Positions 1-33,944 of a stretch of 64,000 bases of DNA are shown piece by piece. This stretch comes from Perna viridis. Lineage: Eukaryota. Within the stretch, counting starts at the first letter, position 1. Every line of letters begins with the position of its first letter. The translations under genes were made by a program, and so were the position numbers. Location of the stretch: contig CM074518.1 of assembly GCA_037379345.1 (NCBI GenBank), positions 682,001-746,000 of the forward strand. Direction: 5' to 3'. The notes beneath the pieces are model-generated. The model saw only the letters and a list, made by a program, of their open reading frames with translations. It made no database searches and had not been told where the DNA came from.

Positions 1-660
1 TTTGTTCTCAGCTTGATTGATCGCTATGGAAACCTGAATATAAACATTGGAGGCAATAGCAAACATGAAGTGGCAGTTGATGGGAAAGGCTTTATAGCTG
101 CTTATTTAAGGGCTTTTTTAAGTACAATAGACTTAAACACAGACTTTAATGTCCAATTTAACCTGTCAACATGTATCCCAAAGGTAAGCAAACCTAATGA
201 GGACAACATCTACATTTTTAGTTTTCTTTACTTCTTTGGATTTATTTTTGTTGTCATGCAGGCATATGGTCTACGGTTGAGATGCAAAATTGCAACATTT
301 TTTTATCCAGAAAGAGATGAAGAGAGAAACAAGTTCCTCCAAGAAAAGATCTGTCTCAAGAGAAAATCTTATTTTAGTTGGATGAGACAACACATACTCT
401 CAAGGAATAAACAATTTCATATTGAAAATAGAATCACTATTCGTGGCTGGCTTCAATATAAATATCCTGTCTATGCCCGATTCTTCAGCTTTTGCCTTCC
501 AACAAAAAAGCAGTGCCTGAACTGTGATGTGGACTATGATGGAAAAAAAAGATTTTCAGTCTGTCCTGTCTGTAATTCAAACTACTGTGAGGAATGCTTT
601 ATTCATGAAATGAAAAATAACTGTGTTGTATGTGATACTAGGAATAAATCAAGAAAATAG
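1..660 (+). CDS. DCST-like gene A, 3' part of terminal coding exon (DC-STAMP domain protein, DCST1/2-sneaky-SPE-42 family); gene begins upstream of the window
   Basis: Open frame from base 1 to TAG at 658-660. It encodes the last TM helix (IYIFSFLYFFGFIFVVM), the family motif AYGLRLRxKIAxFFYPERxxER and a C-terminal CxxC-x12-CxxC-x4-CxxC-x9-CxxC (C4C4 RING-like) domain. About 86% aa identical (30 differences in 214 aa, hand count) to 17888-18547. Confidence 0.93.
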   Translation, partial: FVLSLIDRYGNLNINIGGNSKHEVAVDGKGFIAAYLRAFLSTIDLNTDFNVQFNLSTCIPKVSKPNEDNIYIFSFLYFFGFIFVVMQAYGLRLRCKIATFFYPERDEERNKFLQEKICLKRKSYFSWMRQHILSRNKQFHIENRITIRGWLQYKYPVYARFFSFCLPTKKQCLNCDVDYDGKKRFSVCPVCNSNYCEECFIHEMKNNCVVCDTRNKSRK

Positions 661-13741: not shown

Positions 13742-13901
13742 NNNNNNNNNNNNNNNNNNNNNNNNNNNNNNNNNNNNNNNNNNNNNNNNNNNNNNNNNNN
13801 NNNNNNNNNNNNNNNNNNNNNNNNNNNNNNNNNNNNNNNNNNNNNNNNNNNNNNNNNNNNNNNNNNNNNNNNNNNNNNNNNNNNNNNNNNNNNNNNNNNN
13901 N
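13742..13901. other. Assembly gap (160 N)
   Basis: Run of N. Confidence 1.
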
Positions 13902-14251
13902 TTACTTCCAAAATATGGATAGCTGAATGAATTGTCTAGCAGGAGACTAATAGATTCAGAAAGTTGAAGCCCTGTTAGGCAGAATTTTTTTTCCATTCGA
14001 CAAAGATTCAAAATGATTTTTAAAACAAGTGTTTTAGTCATGGAAAATGTGATTGAACCAGTTCTGTGAGAAATGAGGTGAAGGTCAATACTAATGAGTT
14101 ACGTCTTTCTTACAAATGAGGAGAGGAGGGTAAAGTTTGAAAAAAGGGAGAGGGTCAAATTTCACTTAGTTATTTACAAGACTAAGTTCACATGTCAACA
14201 AAATATCCATATCCATATTTAATTTGTAATATTTGTTCCAACAGAAAAGCC

Positions 14252-15202
14252 ATGTACAAGGTTTCTTTTTCCTATAATGCTGATGCAAAGACAGATATCA
14301 ATCTTAAAGTTGGAGACATAATCACACAAGTAGAAGATGTTGGAAATGGTTGGTCATTGGGGTATAATGCATCATCAGGTAAAACAGGAACCTTCCCAAC
14401 AGAATTTATTATAAAAAAGGAATCGTTCAAAAACAAAATCAAAAGACTCTCACTGGCAAAGAGATCTTCAGACAAGATTAAACAGTCTCCAGTCAAGGCC
14501 AGTGAGGGGACCTTAATCCCCAGGGAGAAGGCAAAGATACCTGACAACATTCTCCACAGAAGACTTACATATCATTCTGGCAATAAGCAGGTAATAAGTG
14601 TAAAACTTCCAAATTCTATTATAAGACCAATTAAAACAGCCCAACATACCATACTTAGAAGTAGTCTTAGGAAGAAAAAAATCCTGAATAGTTTCTTTGG
14701 TTTTGTTGGCGGATTAATTGCTAGTGGAATTCTGTATGTTCTCCTGCGATACAGTTATGACTATTCTATAGAGACATCAGGCTGGCTTACCTTAGGATTT
14801 TCTGTCCCTATTTGTGTAGGGATGACACTATCTACACATATGCGTTGCATCATACTTTTAATGGTGCCAAATTTATTTACTGGAAAAGGCAGGACTGTCC
14901 TTATGTCAATTATTTTTGCCAAACTTTTAGCTGGGCCTGTTGTCAATATTGCATATAATGCTCAACAAGCATCTGAATCTATGGCATGTGCCCAGGAGCT
15001 AATTTACAACCAAACTCATCAACTCAAAAGACAACTAGAGGGGCCAATGCGCAGAATTGAAAAAACTATATACAATGGACTTGTGAAAGTTAGGGATGTA
15101 GCTCAAGGTATCAAGGACTTTATTCAGCCAGTATTGAAGGTCATAGACAGCTTCACAAGTGGGTTGGAAAAAGCTGGAAATGCCCTTAAAACAGCAGCTG
15201 AT
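14252..15202 (+). CDS. DCST-like gene B, coding exon 1: SH3 domain, basic linker, N-terminal TM segments, start of ectodomain
   Basis: Acceptor TTCCAACAG| at 14244, then GCCATG. SH3 signature YKVSFSYNADAKTDINLKVGDII..GNGWSLG..GKTGTFPTEFI. DCST motifs RCIILLMVPNLFTGKGR and GPVVNIAYN..ESMAC. Donor GAT|GTAAGT, phase 0. Confidence 0.9.
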
Positions 15203-16258
15203 GTAAGTCATATCATGTTTGATCCATAGTATTTAACTAGAAATATTGCGAGCAAGCTCTCAAAAGAAACCACTCACTTCAAACAGAGTTATGTAAAAAT
15301 TGTAAGTTCAGGCATGATGATTTTATGGATTTTTGGCATAAATCTATCTAAGGAAACTTAGCTTTTTTCCTGTCATCTTCTCACTTCATTCAGTTTCATC
15401 CTACCTGCATTTTGCATACATTTTATTAATCTTTTTTTTTTTTTTCTTTTTTTTTTTTTTTTTGACATTTGAGTATATAAATTTCTCTTTTGATATTAAC
15501 TGACACAGTGCATGAGTACTTTGATAAGAATGTGCCTTATCACATACAGTGTCCAATCCAACTTTTTGCATCTTTAGGTAGATTTTTGCCCCATCTCATT
15601 GACCATTTATATCTATAGGTAGTTTTTTGCCCACTCCCACAAACCCTTGAAGGTAAGTTTTGTATCAGGGCAATCCCAAGGACTTCCCACATGTTTTTTT
15701 TCTTTAGAAAATTTGACTGGAGTATAACACTAGTGCTTATTAATTTTCAAATTTTTGTATGGCTATTTTTCATCCTACTGAAAGGTTCTCAGAATGAAAC
15801 CCATATTGTAAACAAGCTTAATACAACCAAGGAGGTTAAATCTGTGGGGACAGGTATGGCTACAGCATTAAAACTTGATACAACTTGGACTTTCCAAAAA
15901 TGGAAAATGATCTTGTTGTCAGGACCTTTCACTGAAAGGTGTGTTTACACTTGGTAAATACCTTTTTGTTTCTAGTGTTGTTTTGTTTTGTCTTACTTTA
16001 AACATAATTTATTTATTATTATTATTTTTTTTTTTTTGGGGGGGGGGGGGTATTTCCTTAAACATTTGGAGCCAAAACTTCCAAAATATATCCCAACTGT
16101 CCTTTTATGTGGTGGATACAATTTCATAGATATCTATTTTCTCATATTTCTCTATTTTGTACAACTGCAATTCATTTTATAAAAAGATGTTTTCAAAAGG
16201 ACTCTTTATTTTCTTATTGTTACCATTATTGTTTATAGCCCAAACTTTATCTTATCAG

Positions 16259-16875
16259 AAATGTTCAAGTGGAGTTCAGTATGCCAAATCTAAGTGTGTG
16301 GATGGTATCAATGGAGCTAAAAGTGCCTGTGAGAGAGAACTCAGAAAAATTGATCCCACTAATAAAATCATTAACTTTAGTAAAGATACCTCAAACAAGG
16401 TTGTTGGATTTGGTAAAGATGCCAAGGGTAAAATTGTTGATTTTGGTAAAAGTATTGGAGATGGCATCAAAGGATTTTTTGGAAAAAAGAGAAAAAAAAG
16501 AGGAGCCATGATTGAGCAGGAAAAGGCAGCAATTGCATCAGCAAAGCAACTTATTGGTAGGGTAGAGAGTAGAAAACAACAGAAGATTAGAATGAACCCA
16601 TCAAACCAAGAAACATTCCTTACAAAGATTTCCCTGGACAAACCATCAACTAATGGAAATAACAATCTTGTAGAAAGCACACACTTTCCAAAACTGAACT
16701 TAAAAAATATATCTCATCAAAGCTTAATCCATAAAACAAGTCTGACAAGACAACTCCAATCAACAACAAGAAATCTAAGAACACCACTCGAACCAACAAG
16801 CAGTCTTACACTATCAGTCCAATCAACAAGCAGTCTGAAAACACCACTAAAACTGGCAATACATTCAATACAAAG
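16259..16875 (+). CDS. DCST-like gene B, coding exon 2 (Cys-rich ectodomain with large insertion)
   Basis: Acceptor CTTATCAG| (phase 0). KCSSGVQYAKSKCVDGINGAKSACE aligns with gene C exon 2 ECDKVIGKVYRKCVNGINDAYTKCKE. Donor AAG|GTAAAT (phase 2) joins the next exon in frame. Confidence 0.82.
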
Positions 16876-17262
16876 GTAAATCATATTTGATGTATTCTTT
16901 TTTTTTTTTTTTTGCACAAGATCATTGTCACAATAATTTATTGGTTGAAACTTGACCAAAATTAATGTGGTAACAAAAAGTTACCTGATACTTATAGGTA
17001 TTCATGGGTATCAAATAATCAATCATATCACAAACAATAATCAATGATACCATTGATTTATTTCAATCCAAACACAATCCAATTTTCATCTCAGTTCTTC
17101 AATTTTCTCAATGTTAGCGCGAAAGTATAGTTCAACTTTAGTTTTCCAATAGTTAATTTTCCTTTTCTTAAAACTTATAGCCCTTTTCTTCCATTAATTA
17201 AAAGCTGTATCTATTTTATCAGTTAGATTTTCTATAATTATCTATACTATTTTATATTTCAG

Positions 17263-18547
17263 ATATAAGCGGTTAAGTCTGCTAGACAAAATCTGTATTG
17301 CCTTAGACATTAGTGCTATATGTCAAGTCGTACAGTTGGGAGAATATGTAGTCTGTACACCTTTAAAATTCTTCTCCGACCTGATTGGCCTGACTACCAA
17401 TGGTATAAAGAAAGCCGTCTCCTCTGTGACTAACTTTTTTTACTTTGATTTTGATGGCAATTTTGATTCAACAGGAGACATCTCCTCATCAAAAACTGCA
17501 AAACAAATAGTATCAGAGGTGAAAGCAGACATTTTGTCTAAATTGGCAAAGTTTTCTGAAGCTGCAAGTATATTTGGGTATATAATGAGTTTAGCATTGT
17601 TAATACTATTCAGTAAGTCAGCTATATACCTACGGAAATTCTTGAGCAAGGACCGTTATGACAATTTCTACATAACTACTTCATTTAAGCAATATGACCT
17701 TGAATGTAGGGTAAATGGCAACAGCTCAGTTCTGCCTCTAAAAAGAGGAGAAAGGAGCAAGTATGTAGACACAAGGTCTCTCTTTCTGGTGTCTAAAGAG
17801 ATTGCTCACTTTAAACAGGGGTTTGGGAAGGTATTAATTCATCTCCTTATTGCAGCAGTAATCATCGTCTTTGATTACACCTTGTACTTTGTTCTCAGCT
17901 TGATTGATCGCTATGGAAACCTGAATATAAACATTGGAGGCAATAGCAAACTTGATGTATCAGTTGATGGGAGTGGGTTTATAGCTGCTTTCTTGAGGGC
18001 TTTTCTAAGCACAATAGACTTAAACTCAGATTTCGGTGTTGAATTTAACCTTACAGTATGTATTCCAAAGGTAAGCAAACCTAATGAGGACAACATCTTC
18101 ATTTTTAGTTTCCTTTATTTCTTTGGATTTGTTTTTGTTGTCATGCAGGCATATGGCTTAAGATTAAGACGCAAAATTGCAACATTTTTCTTTCCAGAAA
18201 GAGATGAAGAGAGAAACAAGTTCCTCCATGACAAGATCTGTATCAAAAGAAAATCATTTTTTGGTTGGATGAGACAACATATACTCTCTCGAAACAAACA
18301 ATTTCATATTGAAAATAGAATCACTATTCGTGGCTGGCTTCAATATAAATATCCTGTCCTTGCCCAATTCTGTAGCATTTGCCTTCTGACCAAAAAACAA
18401 TGCTTGAACTGTGACATGGACTATGATAAAAAAATAAGATTCTCAGTCTGTCCTGTCTGTAATTCAAACTACTGTGAGGAATGCTTTATTCATGAAATGA
18501 AAAATAATTGTCTTGTGTGTGATACTAGGAATAAATTCCAAAAATAG
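17263..18547 (+). CDS. DCST-like gene B, terminal coding exon (DC-STAMP domain, TM helices, C4C4 RING); whole protein 950 aa
   Basis: Acceptor ATTTCAG|A, in frame with the 17336 ORF. Motifs YLRKFLSKDRYDNFYIT, VLPLKRGER, AYGLRLRRKIATFFFPERDEER and a C4C4 RING. TAG at 18545-18547. Confidence 0.95.
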
Positions 18548-18559
18548 CACTACTGCTAA

Positions 18560-18845
18560 TACCAAATATAACCATTGCATGTTCAGAGACTGACCGTTGC
18601 TTTAACCAATTATAACCACTACATGTACTGAGTCTGACTGTTGTTTTAACTTGTTATAACCAATACATGTACCAAGTCTGACTGTTGTATTAACTTATTA
18701 TAACCAATACATGTACTGAGTCTGGCTGTTGCTCTAACCAATTATAACGAATAAATGTATCAAGTCTGGCTGTTGACTTAACCAAATATAACCATTGCAT
18801 GCACCAAAAATGATTCAATACATGTACAGAGTACAACTGTTGCTT
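18560..18845. repeat. Degenerate ~45 bp tandem repeat immediately 3' of the gene B stop codon
   Basis: TATAACCAATACATGTAC..AGTCTGACTGTTG units. Confidence 0.7.
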
Positions 18846-19585
18846 TTTCAAAAGTACTGGTTTTGATTGTTGCTAGTGCTACACAGGGCCATTACTTGTA
18901 CCAAACAGTTTGTAGTTGTTATCAATATCCTTGACTGAGACAGTACTAGATCCCATTTGTTGTATTTTTGATAATTTAATAGTGGTATTTTTTGAGGGGT
19001 TTATTGTTTATTGTTATTGTTAAGCTATTCCAATTGCTACAGAATTACCAACAAAAATGAAGCAGAAATTTACAGCTTTTTGTATTTATTGTTGAATTTC
19101 AGATCATAACAAAATTGGACTACAGCTTGTACTTAAAAGGACTAGGGCCGTTGTTTTTACTGAATAGAACGGTTCTTTGTATAAAATATATATAGGATTG
19201 TTGTGTGCTGTAGTATTGAACTATTATACATTCAAATATTTCTTGAATTTAACATTAAAGCATAAATATTAGAGCTACAATATGTTTCAAGATTATCACT
19301 TAGACTACAACTGTAGGCATTGCTGGTATACTGCAGACACTCAAATTTTCAACCTCATTTTTAAGTTGAAAGTAGTTTTGGATTTTCAACTCTTTTCATT
19401 GACACTTTTAAAATTGAAAACCTCTGGTTTTCCTCCAGAAGACCACCCATTTCAAACTTGGAAATGTTCAGAACCTTGCACTGTAAAGTGTTTAAAATTT
19501 GTCTGTTTTGTTTTCCCCGATGTTAATAACCACGATGTAAGCAACATTATGATTTTTTTTTCATGTTATAAAGTGAAAGCTGCAT

Positions 19586-21600
19586 ATAACATTACTACAT
19601 TTGTACAATTAAAGGATTATAAAAAAGAACTGATCAAACCTGAAACCATTATGCCCTTTTGGTTTGATGCTACATTTGTACAGTTAAAGGATTATAAAAA
19701 AGAACTGGTCAAACCTGAAACCATAATGCCCTTTTGGTTTGATGCTACATTTGTACAATTAAAGGATTATAAAAAAAAGAACTGGTCAAACCTGAAACCA
19801 TAATGCCCTTTTGGTTTGATGGTATTTACTATAACATCACTACATTTGTACAATTAAAGGATTATAAAAAAAAGAACTGGTCAAACCTGAAACCATAAAG
19901 CCCTTGTGGTTTGATGGTATTTACTATAACATTACTACATTTGTACAATTAAAGGATTATAAAAAAGAACTTGTCAAACCTGAAACCATAATGCCCTTGT
20001 GGTTTGATGATATTTACTATAACACTACATTTGTACAATTAAAGGATTATAAAAAAGAACTGGTCAAACCTGAAACCAAAATGCCCTTTTGGTTTGATGC
20101 TACATTTGTACAATTAAAGGATTATAAAAAAGAACTGGTCAAACCTGAAACCATAATGCCCTTGTGGTTTAATGGTATTTACTATAACATTACTACATTT
20201 GTACAATTAAAGGATTATAAAAAAGAACTGGTCAAACCTGAAACCATTATGCCCTTTTGGTTTGATGCTACATTTGTACAGTTAAAGGATTATAAAAAAG
20301 AACTGGTCAAACCTGAAACCATAATGCCTTTTTGGTTTGATGCTACATTTGTACAATTAAAGGATTATAAAAAAAAGAACTGGTCAAACCTGAAACCATA
20401 ATGCCCTTTTGGTTTGATGGTATTTACTATAACATCACTACATTTGTACAATTAAAGGATTATAAAAAAGAACTGGTCAAACCTGAAACCATAAAGCCCT
20501 TGTGGTTTGATGGTATTTACTATAACATTACTACATTTGTACAATTAAAGGATTATAAAAAAGAACTGGTCAAACCTGAAACCATAATGCCCTTGTGGTT
20601 TGATGGTATTTACTATAACACTACATTTGTACAATTAAAGGATTATAAAAAAGAACTGGTCAAACCTGAAACCAAAATGCCCTTTTGGTTTGATGCTACA
20701 TTTGTACAATTAAAGGATTATAAAAAAGAACTGGTCAAACCTGAAACCATAATGCCCTTGTGGTTTGATGGTATTTACTATAACATTACTACATTTGTAC
20801 AATTAAAGGATTATAAAAAAGAACTGGTCAAACCTGAAACCATAATGCCCTTGTGGTTTGATGGTATTTACTATAACACTACATTTGTACAATTAAAGGA
20901 TTATAAAAAAGAACTGGTCAAACCTGAAACCATTATGCCCTTTTGGTTTGATGCTACATTTGTACAGTTAAAGGATTATAAAAAAGAACTGGTCAAACCT
21001 GAAACCATAATGCCCTTTTGGTTTGATGCTACATTTGTACAATTAAAGGATTATAAAAAAAAGAACTGGTCAAACCTGAAACTATAATGCCCTTTTGGTT
21101 TGATGGTATTTACTATAACACTATATTTGTACAATTAAAGGATTATAAAAAAGAACTGGTCAAACCTGAAACCATTATGCCCTTTTGGTTTGATGCTACA
21201 TTTGTACAGTTAAAGGATTATGAAAAAGAACTGGTCAAACCTGAAACCATAATGCCCTTTTGGTTTGATGCTACATTTGTACAATTAAAGGATTATAAAA
21301 AAAGAACTGGTCAAACCTGAAACCACAATGCCATTTTGGTTTGATGGTATTTACTATAACATCACTACATTTGTACAATTAAAGGATTATAAAAAAGAAC
21401 TGGTCAAACCTGAAACCATAATGCCCTTGTGGTTTGATGGTATTTACTATAACATTACTACATTTGTACAATTAAAGGATTATAAACAAGAACTGGTCAA
21501 ACCTGAAACCATAATGCCCTTTTGGTTTGATGCTACATTTGTACAATTAAAGGATTATAAACAAGAACTGGTCAAACCTGAAACCATAATGCCCTTTTGA
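19586..21600. repeat. Composite minisatellite, 24 units of 75/90/93 bp
   Basis: Core CTACATTTGTACAATTAAAGGATTATAAAAAAGAACTGGTCAAACCTGAAACCATAATGCCCTTTTGGTTTGATG, with or without GTATTTACTATAACA(TTA). Units are highly homogeneous. Confidence 0.97.
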
Positions 21601-27790: not shown

Positions 27791-27836
27791 TAACAAGGGC
27801 ATTAAACACATGGTTTATAATTTTCATTATTTTCAG

Positions 27837-28544
27837 ATGTTCATTATGACTACAATGGAAGGTGAAGATGAATCTGATGTTTTTGAGCAAGTTAACAAGG
27901 TTGAAGGTGAAGGGGAACCTCATGTATTTGAGCAGAGATACAAGGGAGCAAATATTGAAAAGAAGAATCCAGGAGTTACATTTGCCAACATGTTATTTAA
28001 AAGTGATCGTCATACATTCACTTGTCTGAAAGCTGTTTTTGGGATATTTGGTGGTATTTTTGCTGGCGGTATCCTGTTTGTTATCCTTGTATACAGTTTT
28101 AACTATCCTTACAATCTTGCTGGTTATATTTGCTGTGGATTTACTTTTCTAGCTTGCCTTTTACTTGCCATTTCTGTTCATGTCAGATGTATCATGGTTC
28201 TTACTATACCAAGTTTGTTCACAAGTCGAGGAAGAGTAGCCATATTAGCCTTGATATTTGGATTACTTTTGTCAAGACCAATACGAAATATCTCCAACAA
28301 CATGTCAGAAGTTTCTCGCAGCATGGCATGTAGCACAGAGCTGTTCCATAATCAGACTTACTCCCTCCGACAACAACTGGAAATACCTATTGAAAAGATT
28401 AAGGCTGCCTTGCAAAGTCAGGGAGAGGACATCAAAAAGATAGGTGATACTATAGAAGAGGCTATTGAACCTATATACAAGGCTCTTGAGGCAGTGAAAC
28501 ACCATGTAAAAGAGGTCAGTGGAGCTCTGGACTATGCATCTAAG
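27837..28544 (+). CDS. DCST-like gene C, coding exon 1 (no SH3; short acidic N-terminus, TM segments)
   Basis: Acceptor TTTTCAG|ATG. FGIFGGIFAGGILF, RCIMVLTIPSLFTSRGR and SMACSTELFHNQT are homologous to gene B exon 1. Donor AAG|GTATCA is phase 0 at the homologous position. The exact start Met is uncertain (27837, 27846 or 27855). Confidence 0.9.
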
Positions 28545-28907
28545 GTATCATATGTTTAGTTGTAAGAGTTGGAAGACATTATTGCTTGAATGAAAGACAG
28601 CAACCATATTGATTATTTTTTAACAAAACTTTAATCACTAATTAAAGACTGGTACAAAAACTGGCATCAAACCTGTATCAAATTATTTACAATGTGTTCA
28701 CAGTAATATCCTCTGATCCTTTCATCAGTTTTGTTTAAGTCATAGCCAGTCTTCTAAAACCTCAGTTTAATTCATTGTTAAGTTTATGTAGCTTTTCATC
28801 AGTTACATATTGTTCATCATTTAGAAACAAAGTTGATTTGAGAAATATAATGGGATAATGATCTTGTTAGGTTAATATTGATAAGAATAACTTTACTTTG
28901 ACTTTAG

Positions 28908-29005
28908 GAATGTGACAAAGTAATTGGAAAAGTGTACAGAAAATGTGTTAATGGTATCAATGATGCATACACAAAATGCAAAGAAACATTAAAAAATGTA
29001 GCAAG
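28908..29005 (+). CDS. DCST-like gene C, coding exon 2 (98 nt; absent from the ORF track)
   Basis: ACTTTAG|GAA TGT..GCA AG|GTAAGT. Encodes ECDKVIGKVYRKCVNGINDAYTKCKETLKNVA(R). Phases 0/2 fit both neighbours. Confidence 0.88.
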
Positions 29006-29064
29006 GTAAGTGAGGTATTATTATAAACAGGCTAAAATGTTTTGTAATGTTGTAATAATGAAAG

Positions 29065-30200
29065 AGTTCTGTCATTTACAGTAATGGTAATTCTGTCATT
29101 TATAGTGATGTCACTTCTGTAGTTTACAATGTTGTCAGTACTGTAACTTACAGTGATGTCACTTCTGTTATTTACAGTGATGTTACTTCTGTAGTTTAAA
29201 CTGTTGTAGTACTGTAACTTACAGTGATGTCACTTCTGTTATTTACAGTGATGTCACTTCTGTCATTTACAGTGATGTCACTTCTGTAGTTTACACTGTT
29301 TTCAGTACTGTAACTTGCAGTGATGTCACTTCTGTTATTTACAGTGATGTCACTTCTGTAGTTTACACTGTTTTCAGTACTGTAACTTACAGGGATGTCA
29401 TTTCTGTTATTTACAGTGATGTCACTTCTGTAGTTTACACTGTTTCCAGTACTGTAACTTACAGTGATGTCACTTCTGTAGTTTACACTGTTGTCAGTAC
29501 TGTAACTTACAGTGATGTCAGTTATATCATTTGTAGTTTACAGTGATTTCAGTACTGTTATTTATAGTGATGTCACAGAACAGTGATGTCACTTCCATTA
29601 TTTACAGTGATGTCACTTCCGTAGTTTACACTGTTGTCAGTACTGTAACTTACAGTGATGTCAGTTATATCATTTGTAGATTACAGTGATTTCAGTACTG
29701 TAATTTATAGTGATGTCACAGAACTATCATTTACAGTGATGTCACAGAACTATCATTTACAGTGATGTTAATTCTATAATTTACAGTGTTGTAAGTTCTG
29801 TCTTAAGAGTGATGTCAGTTGTTCCATTTGCTATTATGTCAGTTCTTTCATTAACAGTGATGTCAGTTCTGATATTTTCTGTGATGATAGTTCTGCCATT
29901 TACAGTGATATTACTTCTGCTTTTTACAATGACTCATAGTTCTGTCATACACAGAGATAACACACAACTACCATTTACACAGATGTCAGTTCTGTCATTG
30001 ACAGTTGTGTCAATTCTGTCATTTACATTAATGGCAATTCTGTCATTTACAGTGATGTCAGTTTTGTCATTCACACTGATATCTGTTCTGTCATTCACAC
30101 CAATATCAGTTCTGTCATTCACACTGATATCAGTTCTGTTGTTTTCAATGACTCGCAGTTCTTTCATAATAGTGATGTCACAAACTTTCATTTACAGTGA
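29065..30200. repeat. 24 bp minisatellite (intronic)
   Basis: TTTACAGTGATGTCACTTCTGTCA-like units with higher-order variants. Confidence 0.92.
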
Positions 30201-31522
30201 CATTATAGTCTTTATACTTACATCACTGTTTTAGGACAGCACTTATCAGTATGCATACTATCAAAAGTTAACAGAAGACATGAGCTTCACAATTAATTGT
30301 AACTAAGGATACATAGCAAAATCATTTAGTATAAAACCTAGGTTTAGTGTATATATCATTAATTTGTCCATTGCCATAAAGTGAAAGAAGGATGTGGTAA
30401 TGGTGGGTATCTCACTGTTTGTCGCTAAAATAAAGTTTTGTGGATGCAACTCTTCTGAAACTACTTCATGAATTCTTTTGATATACTGTGTGGTGTACTG
30501 TTGTAAAATGTAGATGTATACTACACCACCATCTTGATTTAGTGAGTTTTGTTGGAGTTTATGGAAACCTCTCCTCTGAAACTGTTCTATGAATTATTTG
30601 ATATTTTGTATGATGTCCTTGCTTCATTGCCTTTCTGTTTAGGCAAATTCCATTGAAGTTTTTGGGCAAAAGATGCTTCACAGAGCACAGCAAGATATAC
30701 CTGCTATGGGCACAAAATTAAAGCTTGATACAGATCTCAATTTTTACTGTGATTAAATGTAAAATACAGAATAATATTTTGACCAGAACAGAAGTTGTCA
30801 ATTCCTTTAACATTTGCAATAAGAATTTCAAAAAATAACAACAAAAGTGCTTTCTTATAAATGCCAGAATTTGTTTCTGGAAAATAAATAAATATCAAAA
30901 GCCTAGATGAAAAGAAATAAACAATTCACTATGTCATGGCACTTGGTCGAGATTTAAAGTCAAATAAAGAGCTTCACAGAGTGCAGTGGTGTAACTCAAA
31001 TATATACCACAAAATACAAAACTTTATAAACATTTTCAAAATCTGACCAAAAATGTAAAAAGTTGTTGTTTTTTTGGTGTGGCCCCTTCAACCCTTTACA
31101 TACTAAAAACTGTAAGAGATATCTGAAATCTGATTGAAAATGCAGGCAAGGATTTCCATAAGAAATCAAATAAATTATTTTGATATTGGACCAAAAATAA
31201 AAAAGTTTATGTTTTTGGGCATGGCCCAAAATGTGTGACCCTTTTAGTCGTAAAAAAGGTAAAGATAAGAATACCCTGTAACAATTTTTAAAACAACATT
31301 TCATAGGGAACAGGTTTACATCAGAATCATAAAAAATGGATTATTAATAAACTTTTTCTATCAATTCAATGATCCTTTTAAGCCTCTTCTTTCAAAAAAG
31401 GGGTGGGGCAAAACCTTAAAAAAAAAAAAAAGCAACAACAGAGCTTTCTGCCATGTCATTAGGAACAATGTGTTTATAGCTTTCAAAAATTAATTTCAAA
31501 ACTCAAAAATCATAAATAATTA

Positions 31523-32597
31523 CAGAGAAACCTGTCTAAATAGAACCCTGAATCATCCAACAACCTGTCTAAACAGAACCCTGAATCATCCAATGACCTG
31601 TCTAAATAGAACCATGAATCATCCAATAACCTGTCCAAACAGAATCATGAATCATCCAATAACCTGTCTAAATAGAAACATGAATCATCCAATGACCTGT
31701 CTAAAGAGAACCATGAATCGTCCAATGACCTGTCTAAACAGAACCATGAATCATCCAATGACCTGTCTAAACATAACCCTGAATTGCCCAATAACCTGTC
31801 TAAACAGAATCATGAACCATCCAATAACATGTCTAAATAGAACCCTGAATCATCCAATGACCTGTCTAAACAGAACCATGAATCATCCAATGACCTGTCT
31901 AAACAAAATTATGAATCATCCAATAACCAGTCTAAACAGAACCATGAATCATCTAATAACATGTCTAAACAGAGCCCTGAATCATCCAATAACCTGTCTA
32001 AACTGAACCCTGAATCATCCAATAACCTGTCTAAACAAGACTATTGAGAGTCCCTTTATATCAGTTTATTAATTAATTAATTAATTTGTTAATTAATTTT
32101 GACCCTGGATAAACCAAAACCATTTGAAGATCCAAAAGGTCTTCAGTTTAGGAACATGTTTCACTGCAAAGGTCCAAAAGGGGTTCAGTTTACATATGTT
32201 TCACTGTAAAGGTCCAAAAAGGGATTCTGTTTAGAAATGTTTTACTGTAAAGGGCCAAAAGGGGTTCAATTTAAACATGTTGAACTTCGGAGGTCAAAAA
32301 GGGGTTCTGTTTAGAAATGTTTTACAGTAAAGGACCAAAAGGGGTTCAGTTTAAACATGTTTTACTGTAAAGGACCAAAAGGGGTTCAGTTTAAACATGT
32401 TTTACTGTAAAGGATCAAAAGGGGTTCAGTTTAGACATGTTAAATTTCAGAGGTCCAAAAGGGGTTCTGTTTAGAAATGTTTTACTGTAAAGGGTCAAAA
32501 GGGGTTCAGTTTAAACATGTTTTACTGTTAAGGTCCAAAAGAGTTCAGTTTAGACATGTTTTATTGTAAAGGTCCAAAAGGGGTTCAGTTTAGACAG
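31523..32597. mobile_element. Tc1/pogo-type MITE remnant whose ends are amplified into 33 bp (~15x) and 40 bp (~11x) tandem arrays
   Basis: The left end TA|CAGAGAAACCTGTCTAAATAGAACCC is the near reverse complement of GGGTTCAGTTTAGACATGTTTTACTG|TA in the right array. Confidence 0.65.
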
Positions 32598-32707
32598 GCA
32601 CACTTATTTCTATGGTCAATTAAATCTTTGGTTTGATGAAAAATATAAAACTGATCATTGACTATCCTTATTCAAAGAGGTCCTGATATTATTTGATCTG
32701 ATTTCAG

Positions 32708-33944
32708 ATATGTTCCAAATTTTGATGATGTACTTTGCCAAACACTTACCATTGATGAAGTCTGTAGAGTGGTCAGCACAAATATCCTGTGTTCTCCAGT
32801 CAAGGTATTGGATCAAGCTGCTGAAAACATTGCTCAACACTTGATTAACCTTGTCAATCAAATCAAAAAATGGTTTAAGTTTGAGATCACTAATAAATCT
32901 ACAGCTGACAAAGTTTACAATGCATCTAAAACAGCCAAGGAACTTATACAAGAAGTAGGCACAGCACTGACCGAAAGGAAGGGCACCTTCACAATAGCAG
33001 TTGATATTTTCAACAAATGTTTGGCACTTTCTCTCATTCTACTTCTCATCCAGGCAGTATTTTACTTAAAGAACTACTTAGCAAAAAATGAATACGACAA
33101 CATCTATATTACCTCCAAGTTTAAAGAGTATGATTCAGCATGTAAAGAGAGAAACGAGCAAACCGTTCTTCCTCTCCGTAAAAAGGAACGAAGGACATAC
33201 ATCAATACCATACTACCAAGAATGTCATCACGTGAGCTCAGAGAAATGGAGATGGGTACTGTCCTGCTCCTACTGCACATGCTTCTAGCTGCACTGATCA
33301 TATTTATTAACTATGTGTTTTACTATATCTTGTACCTTGTTAATAGATATGGTAAGGTCAACGTAGAGGTCACTGGAGAAAGTAAAATCAACCTCAGAGT
33401 CAAAGGTGGTACTATGGCAGATTTCATAAACCTGTTCATTAAAAACATAAATATTGAAAATACATATGAAGCTAGCTACAACACAACACTCTGTCTTCCA
33501 GATCCGACAGCACCTGGCATTGATGATATCCCTGTCCTCTGTGGGGCTTATTTCACTGCGTTTATGTTTGTCATAATGCAAGCTTATGGGAAAAGACTGA
33601 ATAGAAAGATATGTGCTTTTTACTATCCAGAACAAGAGCAAGATCGCATAACTTTCTTGCATAAAAAAATGCTCTATAACAGAAAGCAAGAACACATGTT
33701 CATAAAGCAACATGTAAAGTCTCTACAATTTCAAAAGCAGGCAGAAAAAAGAATGTCGCTTAAAAACATTATACGTCCATGGTCCAAAGGTGTGGTAAAT
33801 GATAATTTCTGTATGAAATGTGGGGAAGATCAAAACTCAACTAATTCAATGAATGCATGTAAGCACCAAACATGTAAAGCAACATATTGCAAAGACTGTT
33901 ATACTGATTTTGGACAGACATGTCCTATTTGCAGAAAATATTAG
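32708..33944 (+). CDS. DCST-like gene C, terminal coding exon (DC-STAMP domain, C4C4 RING); whole protein ~680 aa
   Basis: Acceptor ATTTCAG|A (phase 2). Motifs YLKNYLAKNEYDNIYIT, VLPLRKKER, AYGKRLNRKICAFYYPEQEQDRI and CMKC..CKHQTC..YCKDC..CPIC. TAG at 33942-33944; AATAAA at 33955-33960. Confidence 0.95.

What the first reader, a model, noticed from the sequence alone, without database searches (positions are those of the whole stretch)
14252..14420. SH3 domain fused to the N-terminus of a DC-STAMP/RING membrane protein
Seen: a clear SH3 signature (Y.V.F.Y.A....D.NLKVGDII, GW..G, G..G.FP..FI) lies in the same uninterrupted exon as the DCST TM segments, so it cannot be a mis-join of two genes. 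Paralog C lacks it. Known: characterised DCST1/2, Sneaky and SPE-42/49 have no SH3, while SH3 adaptors (Dock/Nck, Tks5) link fusion receptors to WASP/actin. Inference: a fusion-associated membrane protein with a built-in cytoplasmic adaptor at one end and a RING at the other.
Basis: partly seen in the sequence, partly recalled or inferred. Interest (0 to 1): 0.8.

Follow-up and report, generated by a model that had tools for sequence, protein, structure and literature searches.

The report
SH3 domain on a DCST membrane protein
A mussel-type gene of the DC-STAMP/DCST family, whose known members act in sperm-egg fusion, really does start with an SH3 docking domain; related molluscs and a brachiopod have the same layout in public protein sets, but I found no paper that mentions it.

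Summary
Window 14252-14419 encodes residues 1-56 of a true SH3 domain. It scores above Pfam's cut-off, the AlphaFold2 model is confident (pLDDT about 90), and the model superposes on solved SH3 domains at about 1 A.

The SH3 lies in one open exon with the first transmembrane helices of a three-exon, 950-codon gene (14252-15202, 16259-16875, 17263-18547). The gene ends in a DC_STAMP domain and a cysteine-rich RING-like tail. All three exons map in order onto a RefSeq Mytilus edulis protein of 864 aa.

Three of the five tandem paralogs in this genome carry the SH3. Paralogs C and E do not.

The layout is not unique to this genome:
- Full-length SH3 + DCST proteins exist in Mytilus, Mizuhopecten, Pinctada, Mya, Haliotis, Patella and Lingula.
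- A further clade of unnamed contigs from an unknown taxon has it too.
- The insect, amphioxus, acorn-worm and sea-urchin relatives that I could name lack it.

It is therefore an old, conserved DCST subfamily. It is present in databases under automatic names and absent from the papers I could search.

Function is inferred only: a cytoplasmic docking module tethered to the membrane protein. The single RNA run that could be laid gave too few reads to test splicing or expression.

The parts
14245..14251 (+). Seven bases between a candidate splice acceptor (ccaacag|) and the start codon; probably 5' UTR
   Evidence: Sequence. Paralog D also has an acceptor-like site 10 nt before its ATG. No spliced read was seen, so the acceptor is unconfirmed.
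14252..14419 (+). SH3 domain, residues 1-56, starting at the initiator Met
   Evidence: Pfam SH3_1, SH3_2 and SH3_9. AlphaFold2 pLDDT about 90 with five strands. Foldseek matches to solved SH3 domains, TM-score 0.86-0.90, rmsd about 1 A. PDB sequence hits led by CIN85/SH3KBP1 and CD2AP. Identity between B and D falls from 86-92% to 55-65% just upstream of the ATG.
14420..14665 (+). Basic linker predicted to be disordered, residues 57-138, ending in RSSLRKKK before the first membrane helix
   Evidence: pLDDT 28-42. dN/dS 0.4-0.8, weaker constraint than the flanking parts. No PxxP motif.
14666..15202 (+). N-terminal membrane part of the DCST protein (Pfam 'Dcst2', PF26039, on orthologs) and the start of a long helix; the exon ends at a GT donor in phase 0
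   Evidence: Helices 139-168, 173-193, 195-208 and 211-316. Hydrophobic segments. Alignment with paralogs. PF26039 on orthologs. Phase-0 donors in all five paralogs.
16259..16875 (+). Exon 2: Cys-containing, Lys-rich, poorly conserved middle region
   Evidence: Frame-consistent AG/GT sites. 45% identical to residues 320-432 of Mytilus edulis XP_071181938.1. 42-55% identical between paralogs.
17263..18547 (+). Exon 3 with stop codon: three hydrophobic segments, DC_STAMP domain (17657-18229) and a Cys-rich RING-like tail (about 18371-18520)
   Evidence: Pfam DC_STAMP E 3.5e-49. Genome search places it at 17657-18229. 58% identical to residues 440-863 of the Mytilus protein, with the five CxxC pairs aligned; one Cys is replaced in the Mytilus sequence. 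PF26037 zf-RING_DCST1_C on orthologs.
27810..28544 (+). First coding exon of paralog C: acidic N-terminus in place of the SH3, then the same membrane part
   Evidence: No SH3 profile hit anywhere else in the window.
32769..33944 (+). Last exon of paralog C (DC_STAMP and RING-like tail)
   Evidence: Pfam DC_STAMP E 7.8e-50 and a weak zf-C3HC4_3 match.
1..660 (+). 3' part of the last exon of paralog A. Its SH3 exon lies 5.2-6.1 kb upstream of the window.

Best explanation
Gene B (window 14252-18547, + strand, three coding exons, 950 codons) encodes a member of a conserved DCST subfamily found in molluscs and a brachiopod. Its polypeptide starts with an SH3 domain. An 80-residue disordered basic linker joins the SH3 to a multi-pass membrane core (Dcst2-type N-terminal helices, a variable middle region, the DC_STAMP domain). 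The protein ends in a cysteine-rich RING-like finger.

Shown here: the domain order, the continuity of the reading frame, the SH3 fold, selection against amino-acid change, and conservation of the layout across phyla.

Inferred: the SH3 faces the cytoplasm and works as a docking site that brings a proline-motif partner to the membrane protein. The partner could be a regulator of actin or endocytosis, or a substrate or cofactor of the RING-like end. My odds: the SH3 is translated as part of this protein, 0.9; it is a working peptide-binding module, about 0.75; the partner is an actin/WASP-type regulator, about 0.25; the protein acts in gametes like other DCST proteins, about 0.5.
For: - SH3 profile hits above Pfam's cut-offs.
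- AlphaFold2 model: residues 1-55 at pLDDT about 90, five strands.
- Foldseek hits to nebulette, Src, Abp1, CD2AP and CIN85 SH3 domains, TM-score 0.86-0.90.
- Across 52 family members the SH3 core is kept: W34 in 96%, P49 in 98%, G46 in 100%, G21-D22 in over 92%, an acidic residue at 15 in 90%, Y/F/H at 8 in 98%.
- dN/dS of the SH3 is 0.34-0.39 between paralogs B/D and A/D.
- SH3 and membrane helices share one open frame in paralogs A, B and D.
- They also share one open frame in about 25 unnamed clusters from other organisms. In L021 one such exon is followed by a DC_STAMP/RING exon 4 kb downstream.
- Full-length SH3 + DC_STAMP proteins occur in Mytilus, Mizuhopecten, Pinctada, Mya, Haliotis, Patella and Lingula.
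- The exons of B map in order on Mytilus edulis XP_071181938.1: 1-319, 320-432, 440-863.
- Conservation between B and D stops at the ATG.
- RSSLRKKK before the first membrane helix fits a cytoplasmic N-terminus under the positive-inside rule.
- The C-terminal RING of DCST proteins is described as intracellular (PMC8989947).
Against: - No transcript evidence from this species. The one true RNA run gave 15 reads, no splice joints, and some reads in introns.
- The three runs guessed to be RNA look like low-coverage DNA, because their contigs run through the introns.
- The number of membrane spans before exon 2 is ambiguous, three or four helices, so the side on which the N-terminus lies is not proven.
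- The first Tyr of the ALYDY motif and the last Tyr of the binding face vary in the family (positions 6 and 52), so the ligand class may be atypical.
- No ligand motif was found in the protein itself or in paralog C.
- The local Pfam RING models do not score on B's tail.
Confidence: 0.8

Rival explanations
1. The SH3 is encoded in frame but is not part of the working protein: transcription or translation normally starts downstream, for example at a later Met, and the SH3 is a leftover.
For: No RNA joints or 5' ends could be seen. SH3-less paralogs C and E show that the membrane protein can exist without it.
Against: The SH3 is kept intact with its core residues across bivalves, gastropods and Lingula. 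dN/dS is about 0.35-0.4. RefSeq models in Mytilus, Haliotis, Patella and Mya start at the SH3. The first 317 codons contain no stop.
Confidence: 0.05
2. Gene B is a young, redundant tandem copy that is silent or decaying. The architecture is real for the family, but this copy does nothing.
For: Very few RNA reads. A and B are almost identical over the promoter, SH3 and linker (dS 0.03-0.05, against 0.35 in the membrane part), which points to recent gene conversion. A broken copy with stop codons lies at C8:2059152-2059573.
Against: All three exons are open, with canonical splice sites. dN/dS is 0.2-0.4 in the SH3 and membrane part. A 98%-identical exon-1 ORF (P0001) on an independent ENA contig is intact too. 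DCST genes are testis-specific in other animals (PMC8055269), so low reads in an unknown tissue mean little.
Confidence: 0.1
3. The SH3 is not an adaptor to outside partners. It acts within the complex: it binds another part of the same protein or of a partner paralog (autoinhibition or pairing), or binds ubiquitin as some CIN85-type SH3 domains do.
For: The closest solved SH3 sequences are CIN85/SH3KBP1 and CD2AP (E 2e-7), a group with atypical ligands. SH3-bearing and SH3-less paralogs sit side by side (A, B next to C; D next to E). Vertebrate DCST1 and DCST2 are both required for fertilization (PMC8989947).
Against: No PxxP or PxxxPR motif in the parts of B or C predicted to be cytoplasmic, except one PTAP in C's last exon and one PLEP in B's exon 2. 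No binding test was run.
Confidence: 0.2

Closest known systems
DCST1/DCST2 (vertebrates), Sneaky (Drosophila), SPE-42/SPE-49 (C. elegans)
   Same: DC_STAMP domain (E 3e-49), multi-pass membrane core with a Dcst2-type N-terminal part, and a C-terminal cysteine-rich non-canonical RING. RefSeq names the orthologs 'DCST2-like', 'sneaky-like' or 'DCST1'.
   Different: An N-terminal SH3 plus a disordered linker, not mentioned in the DCST papers read and absent from the named insect, amphioxus, Saccoglossus and Lytechinus relatives. Only three coding exons. It lies in a tree half separate from the insect/deuterostome DCST2-like clade. The genome also has two multi-exon DC_STAMP loci elsewhere, on C3 and C7.
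Database entries with the same architecture (e.g. Mytilus edulis XP_071181938.1, Mizuhopecten XP_021361157.1, Patella XP_050397779.1, Lingula XP_013397132.1)
   Same: Same order of SH3, linker, Dcst2 part, DC_STAMP and RING. The Mytilus protein is 58% identical to exon 3 and about 58% to exon 1.
   Different: These are automatic predictions without any study. Some Mytilus paralogs carry two SH3 domains in tandem (P0002, P0176). The window's gene has a longer exon 2.
CIN85/SH3KBP1 and CD2AP SH3 domains
   Same: Best sequence matches among solved structures (E 2e-7 to 2e-5, about 40% identity). Same fold.
   Different: Those are soluble multi-SH3 adaptors. Here a single SH3 is tethered to a membrane protein. 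Ligand preference is untested.
SH3RF1/POSH-type E3 ligases (RING plus SH3)
   Same: One polypeptide combines a RING-type finger with SH3 docking. The fourth SH3 of POSH is among the hits.
   Different: POSH is soluble, has the RING at the N-terminus and four SH3 domains. There is no homology outside the SH3. E3 activity of this protein is untested.

Membership tests
SH3 domain (Pfam PF00018 / PF07653) | Profile score above the curated cut-off | tested here: met
   SH3_1 29.3 bits against 22.9; SH3_2 28.7 against 21.8; SH3_9 28.4 against 30, just under.
SH3 domain (Pfam PF00018 / PF07653) | Small five-stranded beta-barrel fold | tested here: met
   AlphaFold2 strands at 2-4, 23-31, 34-39, 44-49 and 53-55 with pLDDT about 90. 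Foldseek TM-score 0.86-0.90 and rmsd 0.8-1.4 A to solved SH3 domains.
SH3 domain (Pfam PF00018 / PF07653) | Residues of the proline-peptide binding face (ALYDY tyrosines, acidic RT loop, Trp, Pro, final Tyr) | tested here: inconclusive
   B has F6, Y8, D15, W34, P49 and F52. In the family W34, P49, Y8 and the acidic residue at 15 are kept, while positions 6 and 52 vary.
SH3 domain (Pfam PF00018 / PF07653) | Binds a proline-rich or related peptide | not testable with these tools
   Needs a pull-down or a peptide array.
DCST / DC-STAMP family | DC_STAMP domain (PF07782) | tested here: met
   E 3.1e-49, 167.9 bits, full profile 1-191.
DCST / DC-STAMP family | Multi-pass membrane protein | tested here: met
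   Three hydrophobic segments in exon 1 and three in exon 3. Confident helices at 139-235. The exact number of spans is not settled.
DCST / DC-STAMP family | C-terminal cysteine-rich non-canonical RING | tested here: met
   Five CxxC pairs in the last 55 residues, aligned with the Mytilus ortholog, where one Cys is replaced. The ortholog carries PF26037 zf-RING_DCST1_C. That model is not in the local library, and the generic RING models there gave no hit on B.
DCST / DC-STAMP family | Expressed in sperm and needed for fertilization | not testable with these tools
   The only RNA run gave 15 reads, and its tissue is unknown.
Orthology to DCST1 or to DCST2 specifically | Falls inside that clade in a tree with named references | tested here: inconclusive
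   It sits in a half of the tree separate from the insect/amphioxus/Saccoglossus 'DCST2-like' clade. No curated vertebrate DCST1, DCST2, DC-STAMP or OC-STAMP sequences were in the tree, and the root is unknown.

The most novel reading that the evidence does not exclude
The SH3-bearing proteins form an old third branch of the DCST family in molluscs, brachiopods and at least one unidentified animal group. In it the membrane protein is wired directly to cytoplasmic machinery (actin or endocytic regulators, or substrates of its own RING). SH3-bearing and SH3-less copies encoded side by side would work as pairs, as DCST1 and DCST2 do. If so, the SH3 gives the first direct handle on what DCST proteins do inside the cell.
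Probability: 0.2. Interest if true: 0.65.

Novelty: new variant of a known kind. Interest (0 to 1): 0.42.

Why it matters
DCST proteins are needed for sperm-egg interaction from worms to mammals, and their relative DC-STAMP for osteoclast fusion. What they do at the molecular level is still unknown. A conserved subfamily that carries a standard docking domain on its probably cytoplasmic end offers a simple experiment: find what binds the SH3. That could show which cellular machinery a DCST protein talks to. The layout can already be seen in public protein sets, so the value lies in pointing it out and testing it, not in a new kind of protein.

Tried and rejected
- RNA support. One search for runs and one laying of reads. 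The runs guessed to be RNA (X1, X3, X6) have contigs that run straight through the introns, so they look like DNA. The true RNA run X21 gave 15 reads and no joints. Neither the 14245 acceptor nor expression could be tested.
- First guess at the start of exon 2 (16239, after 'tag'). Rejected: all five paralogs have phase-0 donors, and only the acceptor at 16258|16259 keeps the frame. The Mytilus protein agrees.
- First guess at the start of exon 3 (17336). Rejected: it gives a stop. 17263 works.
- An SH3 exon upstream of paralog C or E. None found with a family-specific profile on six frames.
- ESM Atlas look-alikes. No usable hit.
- Solved structure of a DC_STAMP protein. None found by sequence.
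- The word search with full-length Mytilus and unknown-clade queries returned few hits and no names. The taxon of the long-linker clade stays unknown; one member comes from assembly GCA_013332715.1.
- Ligand motifs for the SH3 within B or C. None convincing.
- The joined spliced protein was not sent to any search or fold. Exons were searched one by one. The join was made only inside a script to check the frame.
- Complex prediction was not used, because no specific partner is claimed.

Full report
**What is in the sequence.** The window is part of contig C8 of a 723-Mb animal genome. Protein matches place it among mytilid-type bivalves. The best named relatives are Mytilus proteins at about 58% identity, and a 98%-identical ORF sits on an ENA contig.

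The open frame 14192-15229 on the + strand contains an ATG at 14252. From that ATG, 317 codons run without a stop to a GT donor at 15203. Pfam places an SH3 domain at residues 5-50:
- SH3_1: E 6.6e-7, 29.3 bits, cut-off 22.9.
- SH3_2: 28.7 bits, cut-off 21.8.
- SH3_9: just under its cut-off.

**The fold.** I ran AlphaFold2 on exon 1 with an alignment of 33 relatives.
- Residues 1-55 have pLDDT about 90 and five strands.
- Residues 58-120 are disordered (pLDDT 28-42).
- Confident helices run from 139 onward.

Foldseek against the PDB returns only SH3 domains at the top: nebulette, c-Src, Abp1, LASP1, CD2AP and CIN85. Target-normalised TM-scores are 0.86-0.90 and rmsd is about 1 A. By sequence, the nearest solved domains are those of CIN85/SH3KBP1 and CD2AP (E 2e-7 to 2e-5).

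**The gene.** All five paralogs end their first coding exon with a phase-0 GT donor. With that constraint only one set of canonical sites keeps the frame open:
- exon 1: 14252-15202
- exon 2: 16259-16875
- exon 3: 17263-18547

This gives 2853 bases, 950 codons plus the stop. I made the join only inside a script, to check the frame.

The three exons map in order onto RefSeq Mytilus edulis XP_071181938.1 (864 aa):
- exon 1 on residues 1-319 (through its cluster representative);
- exon 2 on 320-432, 45% identity;
- exon 3 on 440-863, 58% identity.

Exon 3 carries a full DC_STAMP domain (E 3e-49) and ends in five CxxC pairs that align with the Mytilus sequence, where one Cys is replaced. The orthologs carry the newer Pfam families PF26039 (Dcst2, the N-terminal membrane part) and PF26037 (zf-RING_DCST1_C) in precomputed annotations. 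Those two models are not in the local library, and the generic RING models there do not score on B.

**Start of the protein.** Paralogs B and D are 86-92% identical at the DNA level in the first 180 coding bases. That falls to 55-65% immediately upstream of the ATG. RefSeq or GenBank models in Mytilus, Haliotis, Patella, Pinctada and Mya begin with the SH3 at residue 1 or 2. The SH3 is therefore the true N-terminus.

An acceptor-like site lies 7 nt (B) or 10 nt (D) before the ATG. I could not confirm that it is used. A 160-base N run at 13742-13901 lies 350 nt upstream; I left it alone.

**Paralogs.** The genome has five intact copies in two clusters on C8, plus one broken copy.

| Copy | Strand | First exon | SH3 | Identity to B, exon 1 |
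|---|---|---|---|---|
| A | + | C8:675855 | yes | 86% |
| B | + | this gene | yes | - |
| C | + | window 27810-33944 | no | 33% |
| D | - | C8:2047478 | yes | 78% |
| E | - | C8:2035647 | no | 34% |

- The broken copy, at C8:2059152-2059573, keeps an SH3 fragment interrupted by stop codons.
- A family-specific SH3 profile run over six frames finds no SH3 near C or E.
- Two multi-exon DC_STAMP loci lie on C3 and C7. They are probably the ordinary DCST genes.
- dN/dS is 0.34-0.39 for the SH3 (comparisons with D), 0.4-0.8 for the linker and 0.2-0.3 for the membrane part.
- A and B are nearly identical from 300 nt upstream through the linker (dS 0.03-0.05), but have dS 0.35 in the membrane part. 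This looks like a gene-conversion tract.

**How widespread.** The claim of novelty rests on an absence of relatives, so I ran a profile of exon 1 against 1.84 billion representative proteins. I then mapped SH3, membrane part and DC_STAMP exon on each of the 150 best hits.

Full-length proteins with SH3, membrane part and DC_STAMP in that order occur in:
- Mytilus galloprovincialis, M. edulis, M. trossulus and M. californianus
- Mizuhopecten yessoensis
- Pinctada imbricata (two)
- Mya arenaria (two)
- Haliotis (three)
- Patella vulgata
- the brachiopod Lingula anatina (two neighbouring genes)

Some Mytilus paralogs have two SH3 domains in tandem.

A separate, well-supported clade of 28 clusters from unnamed metagenome, Logan and assembly contigs holds about 25 clusters with an SH3, a linker of 300-750 residues and the membrane part in one uninterrupted ORF. 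In one such contig a DC_STAMP/RING exon follows 4 kb downstream. Its taxon could not be named.

The named relatives from beetles, a stick insect, amphioxus, Saccoglossus and Lytechinus have no SH3. In trees of the DC_STAMP exon and of the membrane part, all SH3 bearers fall in one half of the tree. Paralogs C and E sit next to an SH3-bearing scallop protein, which suggests that they lost the domain. The root is unknown and several SH3-less tips may be truncated models.

Across 52 family members the SH3 core is kept:
- W34 in 96%, P49 in 98%, G46 in 100%;
- an acidic residue at position 15 in 90%;
- an aromatic residue or His at position 8 in 98%;
- positions 6 and 52, two of the usual binding tyrosines, vary.

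**What it most likely does.** Shown: the domain order, the fold and the conservation.

Inferred: the SH3 is cytoplasmic. Three things point that way. SH3 domains are intracellular modules (established knowledge). A cluster of Lys and Arg precedes the first membrane helix. The RING end of DCST proteins is described as intracellular (PMC8989947). The number of spans before exon 2 is ambiguous, so the topology remains open.

The most economical mechanism is a docking site on a flexible tether that recruits a partner to the membrane protein. The partner's identity is unknown. The likeness to CIN85/CD2AP domains hints at endocytic, actin or ubiquitin-ligase partners, but that is a lead, not a test. 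No ligand motif is present in B or in paralog C.

A role in gametes is expected from the family (PMC8055269, PMC8989947). It is untested here. One mussel study lists a DCST2 contig among genes raised in hemocytes (PMC7023338); which paralog that is, is unknown.

**Novelty.** Full-text searches found no paper that links an SH3 domain to DCST proteins. The DCST papers and a review of DCST evolution do not mention one. The architecture is, however, already visible in RefSeq and UniProt entries with automatic names such as 'DCST2-like', 'sneaky-like' or 'SH3 domain-containing protein'.

I therefore rate it as an undescribed variant of a known family, conserved and real, of moderate interest. This scan's index held only first-reader notes on this window and no earlier follow-up.

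Noticed in passing
G000:C8:675555-676230 (L017) against window 13952-14650: Paralogs A and B are 95-100% identical from 300 nt upstream of the ATG through the SH3 and linker (dS 0.03-0.05), but diverge in the membrane part (dS 0.35). This looks like a recent gene-conversion tract covering promoter, SH3 and linker.
   Followed up: partly
G000:C8:2059152-2059573 (L014, L020): A broken sixth copy: an SH3 fragment (72% identical) and a fragment of the first membrane helix, each interrupted by a stop codon, beyond paralog D.
   Followed up: partly
P0002 and P0176 (Mytilus californianus, M. galloprovincialis): Some Mytilus paralogs carry two SH3 domains in tandem before the DCST core, so the SH3 module has itself been duplicated.
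   Followed up: partly
L021:10001-17247 and proteins P0054, P0058, P0064 and others: A clade of 28 clusters, about 25 of them with an SH3, a 300-750-residue linker and the Dcst2 part in one ORF, from metagenome, Logan and assembly contigs of an unidentified animal group. One member lies in assembly GCA_013332715.1.
   Followed up: partly
window 19282-21087: Long open frames made of a tandem repeat of about 25 residues (…TFVQLKDYKKELVKPETIMPFWFDA…), just downstream of gene B. Probably a minisatellite rather than a gene.
   Followed up: no
window 29809-30234 and 31593-32006: Two more repeat-built open frames (…SVLSFT… and …MNHPITCLNRT… units) inside the long intron of paralog C.
   Followed up: no
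window 16490-16501 (exon 2): One RKKR site follows a run of Gly/Lys-rich short repeats in exon 2. The segment is 45% identical to the Mytilus ortholog, which has KKRKRRR at the same place. This bears on the separate first-reader notes about exon 2.
   Followed up: partly
runs X1, X3 and X6 laid on window 13903-18700: Runs listed as 'RNA? (a guess)' gave contigs that run straight through the introns (for example 13903-15419), so they behave like low-coverage DNA and cannot serve as evidence of expression.
   Followed up: yes
L023 (Lingula anatina LFEI02000594.1): Two DCST genes of this type lie next to each other in Lingula (P0040 and P0076). This echoes the side-by-side arrangement in the window's genome.
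   Followed up: no
G000:C10:9712969-9713136 (L016): The nearest other SH3 in this genome (41% identical, strong Pfam SH3 hit) lies on another contig. Its gene was not examined.
   Followed up: no
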